Assembly (NCBI RefSeq): GCF_002571385.2
Contig: NW_019218205.1
Coordinates: 132,570-196,569 of the forward strand
Direction of reading: 5' to 3'
Length of the DNA stretch: 64,000 nt
DNA from: Stylophora pistillata
Taxonomy: Eukaryota
Within the stretch, counting starts at the first letter, position 1; each line of letters begins with the position of its first letter. Shown piece by piece: positions 51,088-64,000 of the stretch. Under the pieces are notes generated by a model that was not told the DNA's origin, did no database searches, and saw only the letters and a program-made list of their open reading frames with translations. Made by a program: the position numbers and the translations under genes.

Positions 51088-54000
51088 TTATGCACTTCGC
51101 TTGGCTATAGATTGTTTGATGCTTCTAATCACCACGTAAGGATCGACATTGACGTTTACAGTCTGGAAAGGAAAAGAACAGAATGTTAAGGAAGCCTGCA
51201 AAATGGAGAGAGAAAGACAAATTAAGCTAAAAAAAAAAAAAACCCATCAACTTACCCCGAATAACATGAGGGAATCGATATCCGCTCGTCTCCTTCGAAA
51301 TTATAAACAAAAAGTTAGTCAACCATCCCCAATCTCCCACCGGCAGTTATGGGCCTTTCGGCCTTCAAGACTTTAAGATGTACTGTGCACAAGGGACCAC
51401 TTCCGCTAATTTTTGAAGGAGATCGTTAGGAAATGAAAAAATGGAACGTAATGGATCAGAGAAGAGTGACTGGGATGCTCAGCATGGTTCAAAATGGCGC
51501 TGTCCGTTGTCTGGAGAATTTTACGCACATTTTTTGAGGGCAATTTTTTGGAAGCTTGGGCTCTAAAATATTTCTATATTCTCTAAAATGGCATTAAAAA
51601 ATATTACTGGTCTCTTGGTCTCTTGGTCTCTTGGTCTCTGAAGCATATACGTCCCTTAAAACTCCAACTTGTTGCTAAATTAGGATGTTATCATTGACAA
51701 AGGAACAAGCTAAAAGATAACAACGGATATCAACTGTTGCACTTACGCTTCCGCTGGTCCACGGTACACGAGTCTTATGATTGTGGGTAAATCACTTTCG
51801 TCAGTAAAAGGCCCCTGAAAAGAAGTGGAAAAAAAAACAATGAAAAAAAAAAAGAATATAGGAGATGTGTCTTTTTTTCATCATCCGTGGGTCCTTCTTT
51901 CTTTTGTCTGTCTCCTTTTCCGTCCGTGCGTTTTCCATCTCTCGTTCTCTGTCTGTCCATCTGAATAAATGCGGGGCGGGGGGGGAAGTTTCTAAAGAAA
52001 CTGGTGCTGGGTCGGTGGGGTAACAAGGTAAGTTTGGCTTTATCAACTGAGTCGTTGACGTAAATTAGCCACCATACAGAGTTTCAAAGCTGACGTTTCG
52101 AGCGTTTTCGCTCTGACGAACGGCTAACGCTCGAAACGTCAACTTTGAAACTCTTGACGGTGGCTAATTTACATTATCAATTCAGTTGATAAAGCCAAAA
52201 TATCCTTTCATCTGATTATCTGTCGCTCTCTCTCTGTGTCTCTCCACCTGGCTGTCTGTTTCTCCCTATGACTGTCTGTCTGTCTGTCTGTCATTCGGTC
52301 AGTCTGTCTATCTGTCCGTGAGTTTGTCTATCTCTGTCTGTCTGACCGTCCGTTCGGCCACGAGTTCTAACTTTGTTGTGTGTTTCTGACTCTTACCAAT
52401 TTTGGGAATACCATTCCTGCACTCATGGCGTACAATTCCATGTCATCCCTTAGAGCTGCAAATAAGAAAAACAAAAAATTAAAAAATAACATTCCTTTGT
52501 CCTTCGTTCTCGTCATTACAAGATTATGAGACATTCCTGCGCTAAAGAAAACACTAACTTACCGGCAATAGAGTAGTAGAGAAGTTGGAAGAGATCTTTA
52601 CAAGGCGTCTTGCTGAACAAGTAAATTTCGTAGGACGCGGCAGGAGTCTGAGAAAGAAAAAAAAATGGCAAATCTGTGAATGTAAGGTTGACTATAAAGG
52701 ACATAATGAATATCCGATCGGGGTTCTTCCTCGAGACTTGCAAAAGCGTCCCCTAAATGACGGTGTCCATTCCATTATAGAGTGTGTTTTTCCTGTTAGG
52801 ACCTGACTATGTGTCCCTAAATCAAGGTGTCACAAAAGAGAGTTCCATTGTAACTTTAATAGTGCCAACACCATCGCGACATTCTTTAGCTTCTTTAAGA
52901 AATTTCTCAGTCACGGCTTTCATGTAAGTGCTCCGTTTATATTTTCTGAGCAGTTCTGTTCCTCTCTTTCCGATGGACGGAAAGAATGCAGCATTAAGGT
53001 ACCGCGTATTTGTGGAAGAGCTGAGCTTCGAAGGAAACAACAATGAAAGGGTTACCTCTAAAATAATACGGAGGACTGGAGATTTGGCCAGGTTCCCAAG
53101 CTTAATATCAGCTTAACAGAAGAGAGGAATGGCTGGGTGCGCTAAAAAGGACCCTAACAAAAAAGTGTCTGGGCGACTAAGGTAACGAAGTGTCCCTGCT
53201 AAGTAATGCTTCAACAGACAAGCAAGGTTAAAGACAACAAAGAAAAAACTTACCACGTATGCTAGAACACTGGCGTTGCCGTGCTGCACTGAAAGACCCA
53301 ACGCGCTGTGGATCTGCAAGACCACGGGATAAAAAAANNNCNTNAAAANNNAGTATCGTTTATTTAAAAATTTTTCCAGAAACATTTAGTGCTCTAGTAG
53401 ACGTGATAACGTAAATAACACTAAGCCTACTGGACTCTCTTTTGCGTTCTTTAATAAAACACTACATTGTCTTTACATTGCGTCTCTCCACCCAGCAGGA
53501 GTGTTAATGAAGCACTACAGATAGAAAGGATTGTGGACAGAGGGGGAAGGGGAGGGGGAGAAAAAGAGGGAAAAGGGGAGGGGTGAGAAAAAGAGGAGGA
53601 AGAGGAGGGGCAGAAAAAAAGGGGGAAGGGGACGAGAAAGGGGAGGGGGAAGGAAAGGGAGAGAAAAAGAGGGAAAAGGGGAGGAGGGAGAAAAAGAGGA
53701 GGAAGGGGAGGGGGAGAAAAAGAGGGGGAAGGGGAGGAGAAAGGGGAGGGGGAAGGGGAGGGGGAAGGAGAGGGGGTGGTCCGGGTAACATATCAAATTC
53801 CCACGTAGACAATCAGATTATGCCATGAAAAGCTTCGAACAGGAGGAGTTTCCCTTCGCGCATTCTTCATTGTCAAAGGCGAGGCTACCCTGTTAACCCT
53901 TTGCCCCTAGAGAGTGACCACCATTCAATTCTCTTAACAATATCACCCCTAAATCAAACAACAGAGTCGCAAAGATAAAGGCATACAGTAATCGCTAATG

Positions 54001-57000
54001 AAGAAGCTCTCGATTGTAACACATATTCTTCTTGATACTCTCTCTGGAAATGTAGAGAGAACAATATGAAGAAAAAAAATGCAGCTGTTAGGGTGTAAAG
54101 GGTTAAAGGAATGTTCGAATATAACATCTCAAAATTATTCACCGAAGTGGAGGTGAATAGTGGTGGATATTTACCTAGCCCCGACGCACCTAGTTAATTA
54201 TCCATCACTTTCACTGACACTGAGATTGATAAATTTCAAGTTTATATCACACAGTTACCCCCGAAATTAGTTTATTTTTTCAATATACCGAAACATGGTC
54301 AGATATCAAACTCTAGACGCGCGATTCTGTCTCGTCGGCTGCTCGGAGGTGAAAATTACTTGCTATCCACCTCCGAACTAACCAATCACCGCATGCAGAC
54401 AGCACCATCAACTAGTATGGTATATACCGAAAATAAATTATCAATATTCCCAACAAAGATTCCTACTTACTCTATTCAAAGCTGAGAAATAGTTTTCTCC
54501 ATTATGATCCGCAGCGTATTTCATGGCGGCCATGTGGAAATGGGCCCACCTGGCTAAAGAACATTCACAAATGATCCAATGAGCAATTCTCCCTTCTGGT
54601 TCCTAGTCATTTGCTTGTTAAGTGGTACAGAGAATTTAAAACAGCAGATGACATTTCCACCTGATTAATGTGTATTCTCATTACCTATGAGAGGGGGGGA
54701 GGAGAGGGGGGTAGGAGGGGAGGAGGAAGTAAGTGGTCATAATCCTTACCGTAGTAATGGTCACGTGCCAAAGTCACATGGAGGTGAGGATGGACTTGAC
54801 TGGCGCTTGCTCTCGGCAAAATATCCCAGTAAATGTGAGGGATTGTGTATTCCTCGTCGTTTTGGTGGGCTCGGAGAAACCTGAAAGAAATTCAACGCAT
54901 ACAAGTTTTCTGAATTCTGTAATCCTGAATGATGTTAGGGGGGAAAACTATCTGTTGCACCGAAGACAACAGCTGCGGGGTTCCGGCTACAGGATCTTCC
55001 TGAGAAAGTGTAGCAATCAACTCTATCTTTGCGGACGATCTCGAGACCGCAAGATAGTTTTCATGATAGAGTGAGTCCTTAATAATGGCAGTTTATCTAG
55101 TCGAGTTCTACGTAAAACTGCGGTTTCCTTGGGGGAAACTTTTGTAGTAATCGCAGGAAGCTGGAATTGGAGTTCTTCATCGTCTTGATATTATCTCTCT
55201 TCTCTTGCTCCAGGGGGCGGGAAGACGAGAGACCCTGGGAACGAGGTTGGATGGAGTTGATAAATGCACTTCCGAGGAAAATCTTGAGTCCGGAACATCG
55301 CAGCTGGTGTTGTTGTTCTTGTTGTTTTAGTTGTTTTTTTTTTTCTTTTTTAGGCGTTATTTTTTTTACCACTGTTTAAGTAGTGCTCATTACTGCAAAC
55401 ATCGCTTTCATCCTCAGTATTGTCACCATCAATATTATCGACAAGAATGACAGCTATCATCGGGTGTACTTTCCATTCCACTCCTATACCAAGTCTATTA
55501 TAAAGTGTGACAACTTTTTTATCTCAAAGTGCGATGAGAGTTATTGCAAAATGAGACAGGTGTTACAAAGTGCGACAGTTTGAATACAGAGTGTGACTGG
55601 TGTTACAAAGTGAGACGATTATAACAGAGTGCGACAGAACAGAGCTAACTTGCAGGCTAGCTAAACGTAACATCTAAGGTTGGATAGAAAAAAGAAAACA
55701 CTCCAAATAGCACTAGTTCGTGGTAAGGGTTTAGGTCCAAAATTATAACGCCACTCATGAAACTGGTGCCAATATTCACCCTAGGAAAGATTGATATCTC
55801 TTTTCTCCTTACCGTATCACTGTTGAATCAAACTTTAAGGTTATGAGAATATTGGAAACGATCACCCAGCAGAGAAACTCTAAATCGTTGAATAAATTAT
55901 CCTCGTCAGCACTTTAGACAATGTATGGAGAACAGTTTGGAAAATACAAAACTGGTTTTAAGCTGAAAAGGGTTTTAGGATTCCGAAACAATATTCGCAT
56001 TGGAGAACGAAAAAAAAAAACTGTCGAAATGAAAATGGAATTAATATGCTCACCACTTCTGCGCAGTTTCCATACTATCAAGAAGCTGTAAGAGAAAAAA
56101 AAATCAATCATCAGCGGAGATATAAATAACACTTCTGATTTATTGAGATGTAGGAAAATCAGCATTTCGAGAGTACTCCTGAGTAATGTTTTTCTTTAAA
56201 AAATAGCGAGTCGAAAAACAGAATGAATTTTGTAAGTCATATTATTTCCAGGCGGAAATAACATGTTTATTATTTTTTACCAATATTGAGGAAAAAAAAA
56301 AACAGTATTCCACAGTCTTTCTGAAGAAATTGAGCTTCGTATTTGTATTGCAGATTAAAAGCTGGTCTGGATAATACCACTGAAATTTAGAAGAAAACAA
56401 TTCAATATGCTATGGGAAATCGAAATCTTTATTCCTAACAATTTCTTTTAAGCGCGATTACTCAGATGCTATACGGATTAATTGTCCGAAATACTTGCCA
56501 AAAGTTTTACTTCTGTTTCAATTTTTAATAAACAAACACTGCAGTATATCTTATTTGAACAGTTTGACATCAACCTTTACTGTCTCAAATAATTTCGTCG
56601 AAGATTAATTTCTGAACATTTAATATCGTGTTCTCAAAGTCATCTTCTGACAGTAAAATAATAAAAAGTTCTCTCCGCAAGTATAAACAAACAAAACTTA
56701 TTGCATTTTGATTCTAATCGGACACACCAAAAAATTATGGTTTTGACGGAAACGAATCTTGTGATCAAACGGCCGTAGTCTACGTAAGGACGAAATACAA
56801 AGAAACCAACAGTCGGACATTTTATCGAAGCAACACAAGTTGCTAGGTGTGATCATTGTTGAAATTCATTCGAAAAAAAGCGAGAGTATCTGTGCGACTT
56901 TTGAAACATGAACAAAGACGTTCTCTCCCATTAGGTGTGCAACATTTACACAATTGTGCGACACAAACGCTTTATTTCAAACAATTTTCACCTCATAATT

Positions 57001-60000
57001 AATCCCCACATCAATTTTGTAGAACGCCCACTGAACCCCACTTATTATTATTTTTTAAAACAGTAATAGGCCCGGGAAAAAAATTCCTGTTTTGCTAATT
57101 TAGGGAAAAAAAAGTTTATCTGTGCATCAAAGTCAAAATCTAAAGATATTACTCTAACGCGTTAGACGTTTGCGAGAATGGTTTCAAAGTTAATTTTGAA
57201 AACCACAAAAATTGAGGACAAAACTTTAAGCAATTCGGTCGATAGAAAAAAATTAAATTAAAAAAAGTCTTTCTATTACTTTTACAAAATAAAACTCTCT
57301 CTTATGGTTATCTTCGGTTTATCAATTCCCAACGCATAACTGAATGCGAATTAGTCGGATCACTTGAAATGGAAATTTTTTAACAGCTCAACATAATGAA
57401 ATTTTCTTCCGGTCAATCATACTGCACGAGGAGGGAAACACTTTGTGAACAGAGTACCAATTAAACTCGGCGGGAACGAACCGGGGTTAAAGCTGTTAAT
57501 CTGCGCTACCACGAAACTGAGATCGAAATGAAATACAAAGACTTCAAAAGTGACACAAGCCCAAAAACTAGTTATTTTGTCCATAGTTGGGTTGAACATT
57601 TGAAAATCACTTTTAAAACAGCACAAGTCAAACAGAAGAACCTTGCTTTGTGTGTAATGTAAACATATAACAGGTGCACCCCTTTAAAACCACAGAATTT
57701 TTCGAGTTAACACCGACGAAAACAATCCAAAAAAAAAAGAAAAGAAAAGAAAAGAAAAGAAAAGAAAAGAAAAAAAAAACCCTCAACGTGAGCAAACTAT
57801 CGAGAGCGAGAGGTATCGAAGACAGAAAATTGACGGGTCATCAAATGTTTTCGCAAGATTGACAAGTACACCGTGACCAGAGTTGAAATGTGAAACAAAA
57901 AAACGATGGAACGCTTCAGAGGTTGATTAAAGTATCTAGGAAACGGTTTGTCAAATTTATATTTCATCGCACTGGGATACAGTTTCTAAGAGCATTTAAT
58001 TCACTTTCTTTTTCTCAAAAAGGCACACATCTTAAGGCTAAAATACGCATTGTTCAATTATAATCCAGCGCTAAGGTCGACGGATTTGATCTAAAGGAAC
58101 ATTGGTTACCTTTGTTAGTAACATGTTTTGACGACTACTGCATGCAGAGGGGGAAAGACGCGTCATGAACAAGACTACACGTCGAACCGCCAGATGAATC
58201 AAAAATCAAATGACTGAAACGAAATCGTCTAGACCTGTAAAGACTGACTGAAGAAACAAAGTGTGGCCTAAAGCAAAAGTCCTAAGACGAAGGTGACCAG
58301 AAATACCAAGACGAGGTTGAAGACGATCTAATAAACACGAACAAAATCATGAATTCAACGTTTAATATCACTGATGTTGATCAACCAAACCTGGGTGCAG
58401 TTTTCTTAGTGTCTGGTTCGTTTTTAGCAGTGATATGTCCGTTAACGGTCCTCGCAAACGTATTACTTTTAATAGCAATTTACAAAGATCCGTTCAAGAC
58501 GTTCCGCACGCCGACCGCGTGCTTTCTCGTGGGTCTCGCCATCACGGATGTGGCAACAGGTCTTGTTCCAGAGCCTATGGTAACAAGCTGTTACTTCATG
58601 CACCACCATCAACATTCCGGGGTGGAACGCTGTGAAAAGATATTTAACATTGCTGGTATCATTGCTGCTATTACCACTAATTCGTCGTTTTTGATAGTTA
58701 TGGCGTTCACTTTCGCGCAGTATGTAGCCATTGCGTTTCCGCTCAAGTACAAGCCTTTCATCAGCGTTCGAAAGACGTTACTTTGCGTGGCATGTATCTG
58801 GGTTTATTCCACCCTCTTTGAGATGTCTCAAACCGTTGGAGTCCCTAAAGAGTTGGTTGAAAAAATCGACTTATACATCCACTCAACATTGTCACTGTTA
58901 TTTACCATCTTAACTTACGCTTTACTTCAAAGAGCATTCCGCAAACAAATGACGGCAAGATCCGCTACCCTACACACCACAAACTCAGTAAGCATGTCCA
59001 CAACACTAGAACTTCACCCTCGAAAACAGAGACGAAAATCAAAACCAATGATCGAGAGGAACTTTGTGCGACTAAATATCCTTCTCATTGTGGTACTATT
59101 GCTATGCTCGCAGCCAACCGCAATATTGTGGTATATATATTTGTACGCTGATGAGGACACGAAAAACAGCCAAACCCTTTTTGTGGTTCGCGTTATCGCG
59201 GACAATACTCTTTATTTGAAGTTTTTCCTGGACCCGTTTTTGTTCGCTTGGCGACTGCCGAAATATCGAAAAGCTTTGAGAGCCGCGTTGAGCAGAAGGA
59301 AGTGAAGAAATGAAAAGCACTCAACACACGGGAAATTTGCATCAAAATCCTTTGCTTGCAAATCTGTTTTAAATCTTATTCACATTAAAGCTCAAACGTG
59401 TTTAAAAGCTATTCTCTTAAAGATAGTCATTTTTTTTTTCTGTATAGAAGCTGCTTAAACCGTGGATTGTCGAATTTAAATTTAACACATTGAAAATGCA
59501 AGTTGGTGACCACTCGAATCCTCTAGAAAATTCAGATTTTCAGATCTGTTTCTGATTGGCATTCAGTTAAACCCGGTTTTACTTAACTGTCTTAACTTTT
59601 ACTCAAATCCGGGTTCGACATTAACTTTTCAACTTACTAGCCAAGTGGCTAGTGACATCTTAGATGCTATGACTATTTCAGTTTATTTACTAGCCAAACT
59701 AGCCAGCGGAAATCGAAAACCACAAGCCAAAACTGAATTTCTACTAGTCTGTGGCTAGTGGGCTACAGTTAGTGTCGAGCCCTGTAAATGTCTTGCTGGT
59801 GTTAATGGGACAAGTTTCTTTCGACCACAAGTTATTTCAATCAGCCGAGAAATATAATTTTGACTTGGCACAGACCTGTCCTGACTGGAGGAATATGCTA
59901 CAACCCATTAGTACAAAACACCTGTTAATGAATTTCGCCGATACGAGTGATTCCCATTAAAATCGTTCGGGAGAATCTTATTTAATTCTATTTTCTTCTC

Positions 60001-63000
60001 TTTTCTTTTTCATCAAACTTCTCTTTTAGGAGTATGTAATTATATATCTGTGCCTTACTGAATAAAAAAATTCATTCATCAGAATTTAAGTGATTAGACG
60101 CCGTGTCATTTGCGTCTCGCGAGAATTTCTTAAAGGAATTCAGAGTAACTGGGGTTTTTTTTAGCGGCCAAGTTATATAGACAATTATGATATTAGTCAG
60201 TCAAGCTTTGATAGCGTCGATGATTTTTAGAAAGACACAGGTCTCTTAGCTCTCAAGCGGCAAAAAAAAAAAAAAACACGCATGATCTAATAAGAATTTT
60301 TCCCTTCTTGGCTGCCAGCTAAGTCCTTGTAATTTAGCCGGGAGAATAAGTAATAATAGAANNNNNNNNNNNNNNNNNNNNNNNNNNNNNNNNNNNNNNN
60401 NNNNNNNNNNNNNNNNNNNNNNNNNNNNNNNNNNNNNNNNNNNNNNNNNNNNNNNNNNNNNNNNNNNNNNNNNNNNNNNNNNNNNNNNNNNNNNNNNNNN
60501 NNNNNNNNNNNNNNNNNNNNNNNNNNNNNNNNNNNNNNNNNNNNNNNNNNNNNNNNNNNNNNNNNNNNNNNNNNNNNNNNNNNNNNNNNNNNNNNNNNNN
60601 NNNNNNNNNNNNNNNNNNNNNNNNNNNNNNNNNNNNNNNNNNNNNNNNNNNNNNNNNNNNNNNNNNNNNNNNNNNNNNNNNNNNNNNNNNNNNNNNNNNA
60701 TCTCACGTTAAGAATTCCATTCCTTTTTCTCAGTTTCTAAGACTTCGTCGTTTATGTAGTGATGACTCTGATTTCCACCACAAATCAGAGTCAATGTGCC
60801 AGTTTTTCGATAAACGTGGTTACCCTGTTTCTGTCGTTCAAGCGGGTTACCACCGCGCCCAACTTATTGATCGACATTCAGCACTACAAACGTCGCATAA
60901 GGAAGATTCCGACCGCATTCCATTCACTCTCACGTTTCACCCTCACAACCACTCAGTTAAATCCATCATTCTTAAAAACTTTAAATTACTTCAAAACGAT
61001 CCAGAGACAAGCACTATCTTTTCGCAGCCTCCGCTCATTTCATTCAAACGCGACAAAAACATAGGCAATTTTTTGGTCAGAAGTTCTTTTCAGACTAATG
61101 ACCAACCAGGCACTTTTAAATGCGCTCGTGCACGATGCAAAACGTGTCCTTTCATTCACAACACTGAGAAAATATCGGGACCCAAACGATCCATTAAGAT
61201 CACCGATCACTTCACGTGCACCTCCGCCAATGTAATCTATTGCATAACTTGCACTTATTGCAAAAAGATTTACATCGGCGAAACAGGCAGAAGACTAGGT
61301 GACCGATTCCGAGAACACCTTCGCGACGTGGAGAGGAATGACAAGGACACATCGAAACCAGTCGCTAGACATTTTAATTTACCTAACCATTCTAAGCAAC
61401 ACATGGCAATCTGCGGTCTTTCCTTACACTTAGGTAGCACGGAAAGCCGGAAAACTCTTGAACAAAAGCTCATCTTTCAAACCGGCAGTCTAAATCCCAC
61501 AGGTATCAACGAACGCTTTTCATTCCACTAATTTATTCGTGTTTTTCTCGTTGCCATGTTCCCACCAATCACGTAGCTCCTTTTTCTGCCTTTAAAAGCA
61601 CACACAACCCACAATTCCTCTATTCGCTCCGACGAAGGGCTAACGCTCGAAACGTCAGCTTTTATAATCGTAACGGTGGCCAATTTACCATTTCAACTTT
61701 GCTGATATATTCAAATCACCTATAGATAAATGTTTCTTTACTATTCACGTATTTTCTGGGTAGTAAGCTGATAATGTAAGGAGAAGATACAAATTATCAA
61801 ATCAAATCTAGGGGAAAAGGCGTAAAAAGACGTTTTGTGGTACAGGATCGCAAAAGATCGTTCATTGGAAATGCAGCCGGAGTTGTAAAAGGCAATCTAA
61901 AACACGAAAAAATAAAAGGGAAAAGGAAAGTTTCATTTCTTCCAACTTACTTCTTCTTCATTTACTTTAAGTGGATCATGCCGTCTCCAAATGATAAGAC
62001 TGTGAAACTTCTCTACTTTAAATGTGTTGGACACTGTAAAAGGCGAAGAAAGTACATAATTTAAAGAGCCGAGCCGACTTCAGAGCAGAAAGTAAATGGG
62101 ATTGCTTTGGTTCCAGTTCGCTCCGCTCTGTGATTGGTATCAACTTTCCGCGCCATCCTTTGCACCAATCAGATGCAAAACAAGACATGTAGGTCACGGC
62201 ATTTAAAAACGTAAAAACCTTTCTTGACAAAGCTCAAAACAAAATTGGTAAATGAACAGTTTACCTACAATTACACTGCAATTAATCTTAGTGTTCGAAA
62301 TGTCTTTAATTTTCCAGCACCCCACTACACTCTCAATTTCTTATTCATGAGAGCGCTTGCTTCTTGAGTTTTCCTGTAAAATTTTGCGCGGCAAAATGGC
62401 TCGCGGGCGGCCAAAATTGATCCACTTGCGCATGCTCGACGTTTGAACACTGTGTTTCATTATCACCTTTCCTGTGCCCAAAAGGCAAGAAACACACGCG
62501 CAAATTGACTGTTGTCATGCGCGGCTACAACTCACGTGTTCCTCCACGCCAGTCGATCGTTTACCCAAAATAAATAAACCTCTTAAATCTATGGTGGTCT
62601 ATAACCATACTTAACCGCTATATGATAACCACAAGTAGAATTTCTGGGTGTAATGTAAATATATAGTATTAATTTTTAAACATTTAAAAGAGAAAAGTAA
62701 TCGTTTGTCTCGCGATGTGGTCCCTTGGGATGTGAATCGCGACGTTTCGACTGCATACTGCTAGTCTTCTTATTTTGAATGAGACAGCAAGAGAGCTGTG
62801 AAGCAGCGGACCACAGAGGGAACCTGATCCAAAAGATGCACCGACCACGGCCGTGAAACTCCATCCAATCACAGCGGAGCACAACAACATACGGGTGACG
62901 CGTACTTAGTCGAACTCATCTCCTGAAGACTAGCAGTATGAAGTCGAAACATCGTTTTATCTTCCATGTTGAATAACCACAACCTATTTTACGATATAAT

Positions 63001-64000
63001 TTTAAGAAACTTATCATTTTGTTTCCCTTTATAATAAATATATCATTCATGTACCTGAGAGTGAATATTTGGACTCAACACTTTCAAAAGGATCCTTTGC
63101 AGTGTTACTGGAAAAAAAAATTCACAGAAAGAAACTTTAAGCCATATAATTGGATCCGGAGTTACTACTCACATGATAACATCTTTTTAAATCTCTAACG
63201 TGATGAAATATCTTCTTTTTACCTGGGGATGATAACAAAGCAAAGAAATGATCCCCACTAGGTGGACTGCAATTCTAGAAATTGCAGAGAAGAAGCCTGA
63301 AAACATTTAGGGTTTGACAAATTTTGAAAACCCTGCCTCCCAGATATTAGCAGTGTCCACCTGGAGGCACAGGATTAAATCGCCTCAATTGCTAACATTT
63401 CAGTCTATCTGTGAGGACCATTTCTTAGCTTGAATCTTATCTCTGAGACCAGGGGAATAATAGGTAAAAATAAAAATCTACTCCCGAATAATCTGAAATG
63501 AGACGAACAACCTATAATACAAAGTTTTTTTCACTATTATCAGAAAATTTTTCATAATGATTGTAATTAAAGACCACAAAGCTAGTGAATAAATCTGCAA
63601 AAATATTCTCTCCAAAAAACATGTAATTTTGTTTAATTTCTAAAAGTTACAAAAGTGCTCACATTTTATAATTGCAGAAGTCACATTCTTTAGCACTGGA
63701 CTGAATCAACTCTGCAAGACTGAAAAGATACTAAAAAGTAATGAATTGCCTTTATCAGCTCAATATCTTTCATATCAGGAGGGTAACATTTCATTTATCA
63801 AAAGAAATTTCTGGGCTGCACTGGCAAACATGTAAAACACTTTACCTTGAACATCAAGAATAATGAAGAAGTAAGTAAAGGAAAATAAGTCACCATGTCG
63901 ACACCCTTAAATTTACTTACAATTTCTTGGTTTCCTCGGTAGCTCCTCCTCCTGCACCTGGCCGTTTCGCACGAAGAGGATTAAACACAGTGGATTCTTG
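51088..64000 (-). CDS. Multi-exon GalT-fold / HIT-superfamily nucleotide hydrolase or transferase-like protein (5' part outside window; 300 aa recovered)
   Basis: Exons (minus): >64000-63921, 63719-63663, 63107-63055, 62033-61951, 56085-56054, 54880-54750, 54553-54471, 53313-53254, 52647-52563, 52455-52397, 51814-51747, 51292-51256, 51162-51088. All 12 introns are GT-AG and phase-consistent; 903 nt = 300 aa + TAA. Motifs FNPLRAKRP, CDFC, SNTFK, WDILPRASASQVHPHLH. Confidence 0.9.
51962..52205. mobile_element. Inverted pair of Penelope ends, intronic; plus-strand hammerhead with canonical CTGACGA core at 52110-52143
   Basis: TTTGGCTTTATCAACTGA..GTAAATTAGCCACC..GACGTTTCGAGCGTT mirrored by AACGCTCGAAACGTC..GGTGGCTAATTTAC..TCAGTTGATAAAGCCAAA. 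Confidence 0.8.
53540..53778. repeat. Almost pure G/A low-complexity tract (polypyrimidine on the transcribed strand)
   Basis: About 240 bp of G and A runs with an internal ~80-bp periodicity. Confidence 0.9.
53893..54106 (+). mobile_element. TTAA (piggyBac-like) MITE, best-preserved copy
   Basis: TTAA-CCCTTT...AAAGGG-TTAA with exact TTAA duplication. A further copy lies at about 55770-55976. Confidence 0.8.
54121..54428 (+). repeat. Decayed hairpin-type element
   Basis: GTGAATAGTGGTGGATA..TATCCATCACTTTCAC fold-back, second hairpin TCGGAGGTG..CACCTCCGA, and CCAATCA at 54382. Confidence 0.5.
55496..55641. repeat. Array of TTACAAAGTGCGACA-like motifs (probable subterminal repeats of a non-autonomous DNA transposon)
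   Basis: About 7 imperfect copies at ~20-bp spacing, ending in ACA. Confidence 0.55.
57728..57779. repeat. (AAAAG)n microsatellite
   Basis: Read directly from sequence. Confidence 0.9.
58349..59305 (+). CDS. Atypical class A GPCR, 318 aa, nested antisense in an intron of the GalT/HIT-like gene
   Basis: 7TM; GLAITD (TM2); AQY in place of DRY; CSQP (TM6); DPFLFAWR in place of NPxxY; basic helix 8. ORF is intact. Confidence 0.9.
   Translation: MNSTFNITDVDQPNLGAVFLVSGSFLAVICPLTVLANVLLLIAIYKDPFKTFRTPTACFLVGLAITDVATGLVPEPMVTSCYFMHHHQHSGVERCEKIFNIAGIIAAITTNSSFLIVMAFTFAQYVAIAFPLKYKPFISVRKTLLCVACIWVYSTLFEMSQTVGVPKELVEKIDLYIHSTLSLLFTILTYALLQRAFRKQMTARSATLHTTNSVSMSTTLELHPRKQRRKSKPMIERNFVRLNILLIVVLLLCSQPTAILWYIYLYADEDTKNSQTLFVVRVIADNTLYLKFFLDPFLFAWRLPKYRKALRAALSRRK
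59609..59784. mobile_element. hAT-like MITE
   Basis: Inverted ends CCGGGTTCGACATTAACT / AGTTAGTGTCGAGCCCTG; internal ACTAGCCA/TGGCTAGT repeats; no clear TSD. Confidence 0.6.
60700..61715 (+). mobile_element. Penelope-like retroelement: RT C-terminal region, Cys-rich linker, GIY-YIG endonuclease, 3' region with hammerhead (61626-61659)
   Basis: Frame open from the gap edge (SHVKNSIPFSQFLRLRRLCS) to the stop at 61531; CARARCKTC, NVIYCITC..C, IYIGETGRRLGDRFREH, PVARHF, GIN. Confidence 0.93.
62738..62955. mobile_element. Inverted pair of ends from a second Penelope-like family, each with a damaged hammerhead motif
   Basis: Minus: AGAA-GACT-AGCAGTATGC-AGTC-GAAACGTCG (62770-62740). Plus: CTGAAGACTAGCAGTATGAAGTCGAAACATCG (62923-62954). 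Confidence 0.6.

What the first reader, a model, noticed from the sequence alone, without database searches (positions are those of the whole stretch)
51088..64000. Hidden 13-exon gene: GalT scaffold with a hydrolase-type HxHxH active site
Seen: 13 short exons (32-131 nt) splice in phase to QESTVFNPLRAKRPGAGGGATEETKKFLAELIQSSAKECDFCNYKINTAKDPFESVESKYSLSVSNTFKVEKFHSLIIWRRHDPLKVNEEELLDSMETAQKWFLRAHQNDEEYTIPHIYWDILPRASASQVHPHLHVTLARDHYYARWAHFHMAAMKYAADHNGENYFSALNRIHSALGLSVQHGNASVLAYVTPAASYEIYLFSKTPCKDLFQLLYYSIAALRDDMELYAMSAGMVFPKLGPFTDESDLPTIIRLVYRGPAEARRADIDSLMLFGTVNVNVDPYVVIRSIKQSIAKRSA*. Established: RAKRP, a CxxC zinc site and (G/S)AS..HPH mark the GalT branch of the HIT superfamily, whose transferases and phosphorylases use HxHxQ, whereas Hint/Fhit/aprataxin hydrolases use HxHxH. 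Inference: this protein is too divergent to be Leloir-pathway GALT. It may be an uncharacterised animal enzyme that hydrolyses a nucleotide-sugar, APS or a dinucleoside polyphosphate on a GalT fold.
Basis: partly seen in the sequence, partly recalled or inferred. Interest (0 to 1): 0.8.

Follow-up and report, generated by a model that had tools for sequence, protein, structure and literature searches.

The report
Membrane-anchored GalT-fold HIT enzyme gene
A real, expressed 17-exon coral gene encodes a membrane-anchored enzyme with the galactose-1-phosphate uridylyltransferase fold; it belongs to an unstudied family found from single-celled relatives of animals to corals and sea urchins, and its third histidine varies between lineages, so it is not evidence for hydrolase chemistry.

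Summary
RNA-seq reads and an intron-free public cDNA contig confirm every junction. The gene runs past the window end: four more 5' exons give 17 coding exons and 470 aa. The assembly gap at 60362-60699 lies inside intron 4 and hides no exon.

The GalT scaffold is supported. An AlphaFold2 model (pLDDT 91) matches Arabidopsis ADP-glucose phosphorylase (Z 23.4) and E. coli and human GALT (Z 22). Single-domain Hint/Fhit proteins reach only about Z 10. No Pfam, NCBIfam or PDB sequence match exists. A canonical GALT with HPHCQ lies on another contig, so this is not the Leloir enzyme.

The hydrolase inference is not supported. In 40 homologues the third motif position is H in 27 and Q in 13, with at least two to four switches on the tree. 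Everything else in the active site stays fixed.

New here: nearly all full-length members carry an N-terminal signal anchor, a conserved cysteine pair and an extra domain. This places the catalytic domain in the secretory lumen or outside the cell, which to my knowledge is not reported for this branch. The substrate is unknown.

The parts
63921..64000 (-). Holds RAKRP at 63973-63959.
63663..63719 (-). Exon with the CxxC zinc-site cysteines (63685-63674); both are invariant in 40 homologues.
63055..63107 (-). Coding exon (53 nt)
61951..62033 (-). Coding exon (83 nt). Holds the SNTF segment that hhalign places on GalT's TNDF, and the likely third zinc ligand His240.
60362..60699 (.). Assembly gap, inside intron 4 (61950-56086). 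No exon is missing across it.
56054..56085 (-). 32-nt micro-exon
54750..54880 (-). 131-nt catalytic exon. HIT motif HPHLH at 54792-54778: His290 zinc ligand, His292 nucleophile, His294 the variable third position (P0075 numbering).
54471..54553 (-). Coding exon (83 nt)
   Evidence: (loose end at 53313)
53254..53313 (-). Coding exon (60 nt)
52563..52647 (-). Coding exon (85 nt)
52397..52455 (-). Coding exon (59 nt)
51747..51814 (-). Coding exon (68 nt)
51256..51292 (-). 37-nt exon. Encodes the conserved loop (residues 423-434) that touches the partner subunit's HIT motif in the dimer model.
51088..51162 (-). Last coding exon with the stop at 51090-51088. The stop is polymorphic in RNA reads and in P0075.
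50960..51087 (-). 3' UTR, at least to the small N run at 50939-50959

Best explanation
This is an expressed 17-exon minus-strand gene for a 470-aa type II membrane protein. It has a short basic cytosolic tail and one N-terminal signal-anchor helix. Next comes a family-specific domain of about 100 residues with a conserved cysteine pair. The last part is a class-I GalT-type double-HIT catalytic domain (about residues 148-458) facing the secretory lumen or the cell exterior. It belongs to an uncharacterised family with no Pfam model, found in unicellular holozoans, sponges, cnidarians, echinoderms, hemichordates and several protostome phyla. Inferred mechanism: the enzyme is a GalT-like homodimer. 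A structural zinc is held by Cys197, Cys200, His240 and His290. His292 attacks the alpha-phosphate of a nucleoside-diphosphate substrate (an NDP-sugar or a similar NDP-X) and forms a covalent NMP-histidine intermediate. The NMP then passes to an acceptor bound across the dimer interface. The third motif residue (His294 here, Gln in many orthologues) hydrogen-bonds that phosphoryl group. H and Q appear interchangeable for this role. By analogy with the two nearest structures, the acceptor is most likely phosphate or a sugar phosphate; water is possible. Shown: gene structure, expression, fold, conservation pattern and H/Q variability. Inferred: topology, zinc site, covalent mechanism, dimer and acceptor.
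For: Gene and expression. Fold: AlphaFold2 pLDDT 91.3 and pTM 0.85. Foldseek top hits are At5g18200 ADP-glucose phosphorylase and GALT, E 2e-9 to 4e-7. VIA gives Z 23.4 (2h39, rmsd 3.1, 272 aligned) and Z 22.1 (1hxq, 5in3), against 14.4 for DUF4931 and 10.8 or less for single HIT domains. hhalign of the family profile against E. coli GalT gives probability 82%, E 1e-5, and pairs RAKRP, CxxC, SNTF/TNDF and HPH-x-H/Q. Invariant in 40 homologues: C197, D198, C200, D279, S287, H290, H292. H/Q: 27 H and 13 Q, 4 changes on the tree and at least 2 forced by well-supported branches; taxa. Anchor: a hydrophobic 19-mer with mean Kyte-Doolittle above 2 near the N-terminus in 33 of 40 sequences, mostly with more K/R before than after it. 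The window gene's first exon shows the same. Cys73 is 100% and Cys101 87% conserved. Dimer: score 0.79, best of 3 controls 0.01. The mark was reached by 21 of 30 proteins solved as pairs of one chain and 0 of 23 solved as single chains. On eukaryotes it was reached by 17 of 29 (animals 7 of 16) but by only 1 of 7 with no older solved relative, so the pass may be from memory. Runs agree in at least 96% of contacts and partner pLDDT is at least 85. His294 touches residues 429-430 of the other copy.
Against: There is no biochemical or localisation data for any member (one search found no paper). Topology rests on hydropathy and the positive-inside rule alone. The C-terminal half has no detectable sequence similarity to GalT, so acceptor-site residues cannot be mapped. 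I could not inspect model coordinates. Scleractinian orthologues replace the otherwise conserved acidic residue at 431 with M or Q, so coral enzymes may differ in acceptor. The dimer pass may reflect memory of solved GalT dimers. A change of chemistry linked to H294 is not excluded.
Confidence: 0.7

Rival explanations
1. One reading: the third-position histidine converts a GalT scaffold into a hydrolase that cleaves an NDP-sugar, APS or a dinucleoside polyphosphate with water as acceptor.
For: The HPHLH motif is real and is uniform across 18 cnidarian sequences. GalT-branch enzymes normally carry HxHxQ (bioRxiv 10.64898/2026.09.13.751320). Cnidarian H-type sequences also differ from Q-type ones just after the motif and in the 428-431 loop.
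Against: H and Q alternate among clear orthologues with an otherwise fixed active site, including within echinoderms. The M. tuberculosis Ap4A phosphorylase has HxHxH and is still a phosphorylase (PMC7705103). The whole acceptor-side half of the GalT fold and the predicted dimer interface are retained.
Confidence: 0.2
2. It is a catalytically dead or purely nucleotide-binding protein, for example a luminal sensor or lectin-like receptor that kept the fold.
For: No activity is known for any member. The family is very divergent from GalT (11-15% identity).
Against: The nucleophile His292, the zinc ligands, Ser287 and the RxKRP phosphate-binding motif are invariant or nearly so from Capsaspora to corals. 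That pattern fits selection on catalysis.
Confidence: 0.07
3. It is the coral's Leloir-pathway galactose-1-phosphate uridylyltransferase.
For: The fold matches. Some automatic names (UniRef, ESM Atlas) call relatives galactose-1-phosphate uridylyltransferase.
Against: There is no PF01087 or PF02744 hit even at E 10. A canonical GALT with HPHCQ sits on contig C202. The protein has a membrane anchor and a luminal orientation.
Confidence: 0.02

Closest known systems
Arabidopsis ADP-glucose phosphorylase At5g18200 (PDB 2H39, 1Z84, 1ZWJ)
   Same: It is the best structural match over the whole catalytic domain (Z 23.4, rmsd 3.1, 272 residues). Both have a double-HIT fold, and At5g18200 is a homodimer with active sites between subunits.
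   Different: Sequence identity is 13-15%. At5g18200 has no membrane anchor and no N-terminal extra domain. Its motif ends in Q (my own knowledge). The acceptor of the coral protein is unknown.
Class I galactose-1-phosphate uridylyltransferase (E. coli 1HXQ/1GUP, human 5IN3/6GQD; Pfam PF01087 + PF02744)
   Same: Fold match at Z 22. RAKRP, CxxC, S-x-x-HPH and the nucleophile histidine align.
   Different: It is not a Pfam member. The third motif residue is H rather than Q. The C-terminal half is unrecognisable by sequence. GALT is cytosolic and soluble, whereas this protein is anchored. The coral has its own canonical GALT.
DUF4931 / DUF4921 bacterial GalT-like proteins (PDB 4QVU)
   Same: They belong to the same branch. 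They give language-model leads and a fold match at Z 14.4.
   Different: The structural match is clearly weaker. There is no HMM hit. They are prokaryotic and soluble.
Hint / Fhit / aprataxin HIT hydrolases
   Same: They share the HxHxH motif. The N-terminal HIT half superposes at Z 9-11. There is one weak profile hit to a Hint (E 0.25).
   Different: They are single-HIT-domain proteins that dimerise differently. They cover only residues about 190-305 of this protein. They are not the nearest relatives.
M. tuberculosis Ap4A phosphorylase Rv2613c (PDB 3ANO)
   Same: It is a HIT enzyme with a full HxHxH motif that uses phosphate, not water (PMC7705103). It shows that the third H does not dictate hydrolysis.
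   Different: It is of the single-HIT Fhit-like type (Z 9.8 on the N-half only), bacterial and soluble.

Membership tests
HIT superfamily, GalT branch (class I GalT-type double-HIT fold) | Two tandem HIT-like half-domains in one chain | tested here: met
   VIA Z 20.6-23.4 to At5g18200, E. coli and human GALT over model residues 148-458. An unbiased scan of 48,161 chains gives the same top three.
HIT superfamily, GalT branch (class I GalT-type double-HIT fold) | Modified motif HxHxQ | tested here: not met
   The window gene has HPHLH. However, 13 of 40 family members, including the unicellular holozoans, have HxHxQ.
HIT superfamily, GalT branch (class I GalT-type double-HIT fold) | Zinc site made of CxxC plus two histidines, and the nucleophile histidine | tested here: met
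   C197, C200, H290 and H292 are invariant and H240 is at least 90% conserved. hhalign pairs them with E. coli C52, C55, H164 and H166. Metal binding itself was not tested.
HIT superfamily, GalT branch (class I GalT-type double-HIT fold) | Homodimer with active sites at the subunit interface | tested here: inconclusive
   The dimer model scores 0.79 against a best control of 0.01. The mark was reached by 21 of 30 proteins solved as pairs of one chain and 0 of 23 solved as single chains. On eukaryotes only 1 of 7 with no older solved relative reached it, so the pass may be from memory of GalT dimers.
Leloir GALT (Pfam PF01087/PF02744, EC 2.7.7.12) | Matches the curated Pfam models | tested here: not met
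   P0075 and five relatives give no such hit at E up to 10. A PF01087 scan of the genome hits only contig C202.
Leloir GALT (Pfam PF01087/PF02744, EC 2.7.7.12) | UDP-hexose:hexose-1-phosphate exchange activity | not testable with these tools
   Needs an enzyme assay.
Hint/Fhit/aprataxin hydrolases | Single HIT domain with HxHxH | tested here: not met
   The motif is present, but the architecture is double-HIT. These proteins match only the N-half, at Z about 10.
Type II (signal-anchor) membrane proteins of the secretory pathway | A single N-terminal hydrophobic helix after a basic tail, with no other transmembrane segment | tested here: met
   The first exon has a basic tail followed by a hydrophobic stretch of about 19 residues. 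This is the only segment with mean hydropathy above 1.6 in P0075, and 33 of 40 homologues have one. Orientation and localisation were not tested experimentally.

The most novel reading that the evidence does not exclude
This family is the first GalT-branch HIT enzyme that works inside the secretory pathway or on the cell surface. It would be a membrane-anchored luminal or ecto nucleotidyl-transferase, phosphorylase or hydrolase acting on nucleotide sugars, APS/PAPS or extracellular dinucleotides. It would be ancient in Holozoa and absent from the usual model organisms. The recurrent Q-to-H switch would tune the choice of acceptor between phosphate and water.
Probability: 0.25. Interest if true: 0.75.

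Novelty: new variant of a known kind. Interest (0 to 1): 0.5.

Why it matters
To my knowledge, all characterised GalT-branch enzymes (GALT, ADP-glucose phosphorylase, Ap4A phosphorylases, GDP-hexose phosphorylases) are soluble cytosolic or nuclear proteins. A conserved, signal-anchored member with its own extra domain implies nucleotidyl-transfer chemistry in the Golgi/ER lumen or outside the cell. No enzyme of this branch is known to act there. The family has no Pfam model, no solved structure and no paper. It spans unicellular holozoans to deuterostomes, yet no vertebrate, insect or nematode member appeared among the named hits. That would explain why it has been overlooked. The natural H/Q alternation offers a ready experiment on what the third HIT residue does in the GalT branch.

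Tried and rejected

The following searches found nothing:
- Pfam on single exons.
- phmmer of the catalytic exon and of P0008 against PDB sequences.
- NCBIfam.
- The family profile against PDB sequences, which gave only a non-significant Hint hit at E 0.25.
- hhalign of the family against the C-terminal half of E. coli GalT, probability 0.1%.
- Rfam on 50500-64000.
- Earlier notes of this scan.
- A paper search for six orthologue locus names.

Only 50960-53337 could be laid, so the seven upstream in-window junctions rest on the Logan cDNA contigs rather than on raw reads.

A second word search with the family profile scored only 8000 candidates and added just a sponge orthologue. Absence from vertebrates, insects and nematodes is therefore not shown.

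Exons were searched by reference. P0075, an independent database protein about 98% identical across the tiled exons, served as proxy for family scans, folding and the dimer test.

Leloir GALT was considered and rejected. A pseudogene or chance ORF chain was also rejected.
Full report
1. Anatomy. The window is G000:C421:132570-196569 of a 398-Mb assembly. RNA runs that hold the stretch are labelled as coral. Open-frame listing and splice-site scanning give 13 exons with the coordinates listed under parts. Every intron starts with GT and ends with AG, and the phases join without a stop. The exon lengths in order are 80 (cut by the window edge), 57, 53, 83, 32, 131, 83, 60, 85, 59, 68, 37 and 75 nt.

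2. The gap. The N run at 60362-60699 lies in the 5.9-kb intron 4 (61950-56086). Two independent lines show that no coding sequence is lost there. The exon translations tile P0075 without a break: exon 4 covers residues 223-249, the 32-nt exon covers 250-259, and the catalytic exon covers 261-303. The intron-free contig L010 passes from 61951 straight to 56085 between its positions 877 and 878. The scattered Ns at 53338-53351 are intronic, 25-38 nt upstream of the acceptor of the 60-nt exon.

3. Expression and splicing. Reads were laid on 50960-53337. These were raw reads of two stranded RNA runs plus contigs of a poly-A RNA run, from three studies in all. They give exact joints at 51162/51256, 51292/51747, 51814/52397, 52455/52563 and 52647/53254. 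All five have CT..AC ends on the plus strand, which is GT..AG on the minus strand. A loose end at 53313 spells the last codons of the preceding exon. First mates lie almost only on the plus strand, as expected for a minus-strand RNA in the usual stranded libraries. Three Logan contigs of 1510-1680 nt (L010-L012, consecutive run accessions, probably one study) carry the whole open frame without introns. L010 aligns to 17 genomic blocks at 96-100% identity, with breaks at the predicted exon ends.

4. The full gene. DNA fetched beyond the window holds four more coding exons. The full coding sequence is 1413 nt, or 470 aa. The first exon encodes a short basic tail followed by a strongly hydrophobic stretch of about 19 residues.

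5. Relatives. The spliced model has no reference, so I searched exon by exon and left out the joined search. Single exons hit nothing in Pfam or PDB. The 43-aa catalytic exon, searched against 1.84 billion representatives, found 71 proteins, many of 415-500 aa. A word search seeded with one of them found named orthologues, all annotated as 'uncharacterized' or 'hypothetical' proteins. They come from Exaiptasia, Actinia, Oculina, Montipora, Acropora, Desmophyllum, Rhopilema, sea urchins, Saccoglossus, Ptychodera and a crab. Cluster look-ups add Capsaspora, Creolimax, Chromosphaera, Salpingoeca, a rotifer, Dendronephthya, Dreissena, Priapulus, Capitella, Asterias and shrimps. A sponge was added. 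P0075 (461 aa) is about 98% identical across the tiled exons and served as the referenced stand-in for the window's protein. None of these proteins matches any Pfam or NCBIfam model, even at E 10. No paper mentions the six locus names I tried.

6. Fold. AlphaFold2 on a 40-sequence alignment gave mean pLDDT 91.3 and pTM 0.85. Foldseek and VIA-align both rank Arabidopsis ADP-glucose phosphorylase first: Z 23.4, rmsd 3.1 A, 272 residues aligned. E. coli and human GALT follow at Z 21.5-22.1, then a DUF4931 protein at 14.4. Single-domain Hint/Fhit proteins reach Z 9-11 on residues about 190-305 only, and yeast Apa2 reaches 9.2. A scan that does not depend on Foldseek gives the same order. Profile-profile comparison with E. 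coli GalT (probability 82%, E 1e-5) pairs RAKRP with RAKRP and CxxC with C52/C55. It also pairs SNTF with TNDF, and S-x-x-HPH-x-H with S-x-x-HPH-x-Q. The roles of those E. coli residues (zinc ligands C52, C55, H115 and H164; nucleophile H166; Q168 on the phosphoryl oxygen) are from my own knowledge of the GalT literature. The C-terminal half is similar in structure only. Residues 46-147 match nothing, but they were not searched as a separate domain.

7. The H-versus-Q question. The rule that GalT-branch enzymes carry HxHxQ while Hint, Fhit and aprataxin carry HxHxH is stated in bioRxiv 10.64898/2026.09.13.751320. In this family the third position is H in 27 and Q in 13 of 40 sequences. On a maximum-likelihood tree built without that column, the character changes 4 times, and at least twice if only well-supported branches are trusted. 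All 18 cnidarian sequences have H. The four unicellular holozoans, the sea urchin and both hemichordates have Q, while the starfish has H. The surrounding residues are the same in both classes. The tree is unrooted, so I cannot prove the direction of change. Q in every unicellular holozoan and in canonical GalT enzymes makes Q the likelier older state. Independently, the M. tuberculosis Ap4A phosphorylase has the full HxHxH motif and is still a phosphorylase (PMC7705103). The motif alone therefore does not predict hydrolysis.

8. Not the Leloir enzyme. A six-frame scan of the genome with PF01087 hits three exons on contig C202 above the curated cut-off and nothing on C421. The C202 gene reads HPHCQ. 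A third, divergent relative lies on C313. It has about 30% identity, a 217-aa single open frame and the motif HGHSH.

9. Topology and quaternary structure (inferred). Of 40 family members, 33 have one N-terminal 19-residue window with mean Kyte-Doolittle hydropathy above 2, mostly with more Lys/Arg before than after it. The exceptions look like truncated models. P0075 has no other such segment. Cys73 and Cys101 in the extra domain are 100% and 87% conserved, which would fit a disulfide in an oxidising compartment. A two-copy model of residues 147-461 scored 0.79, with a best control of 0.01 among 3 controls. The mark was reached by 21 of 30 proteins solved as pairs of one chain and by 0 of 23 solved as single chains. 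On eukaryotes it was reached by 17 of 29 (animals 7 of 16), but by only 1 of the 7 with no older solved relative, so the pass may be from memory. The runs agree in at least 96% of contacts and the partner pLDDT is at least 85. In that model His294 of one copy touches residues 429-430 of the other. These lie in the conserved loop encoded by the 37-nt exon, which echoes the shared active sites of GalT and At5g18200 described.

10. Verdict. The GalT-fold assignment is correct, and so is the view that this is not Leloir GALT. The hydrolase inference from the third histidine is not supported, although it is not excluded. The more interesting feature lies outside the window: a conserved signal anchor and an extra domain place a GalT-type nucleotidyl-transfer domain in the secretory lumen or outside the cell, in a holozoan-wide family that nobody has studied. 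The substrate and acceptor remain unknown.

Noticed in passing
window 58349-59305 (+), inside intron 4 of the HIT gene: An intronless rhodopsin-type GPCR open frame (339-aa stop-to-stop frame from 58286; Pfam 7tm_1, E 1e-16) is nested on the opposite strand.
   Followed up: partly
window 60701-61528 (+), directly after the assembly gap: An open frame with a GIY-YIG nuclease domain (Pfam E 9.6e-5) and cysteine-rich motifs. It looks like the endonuclease end of a Penelope-like retroelement cut by the gap, which may be why the assembly broke there.
   Followed up: partly
window about 52040-52210, intron 10: A palindromic interspersed repeat of about 170 nt, with more than 2300 candidate copies in the genome and matches on both strands at the same places. 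RNA depth in the thousands here comes from the repeat family, not from this gene. Another repeat copy lies near 61577-61702, seen by eye only.
   Followed up: partly
G000:C313:296562-297215 (-), locus L008: A divergent paralogue of the HIT gene. Its 217-aa C-terminal part lies in a single open frame, it has about 30% identity, and its motif is HGHSH. An upstream frame resembles the family's N-terminal domain.
   Followed up: partly
G000:C202:475129-478186 (+), loci L013-L015: The coral's canonical galactose-1-phosphate uridylyltransferase gene. It matches PF01087 over the cut-off in three exons and has the motif HPHCQ.
   Followed up: yes
window 51088-51090: The stop codon is polymorphic. 51089 T>G appears in 4 of 7 reads of one RNA run, and P0075 reads Gln there and ends three residues later.
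   Followed up: partly
window 53454-53825, intron 7: A purine-rich low-complexity stretch gives long G/E/K/R-rich open frames on the plus strand and P/S/L-rich ones on the minus strand. It has no Pfam hit and lies beyond the laid stretch, so its RNA cover was not tested. I treat it as simple sequence.
   Followed up: no
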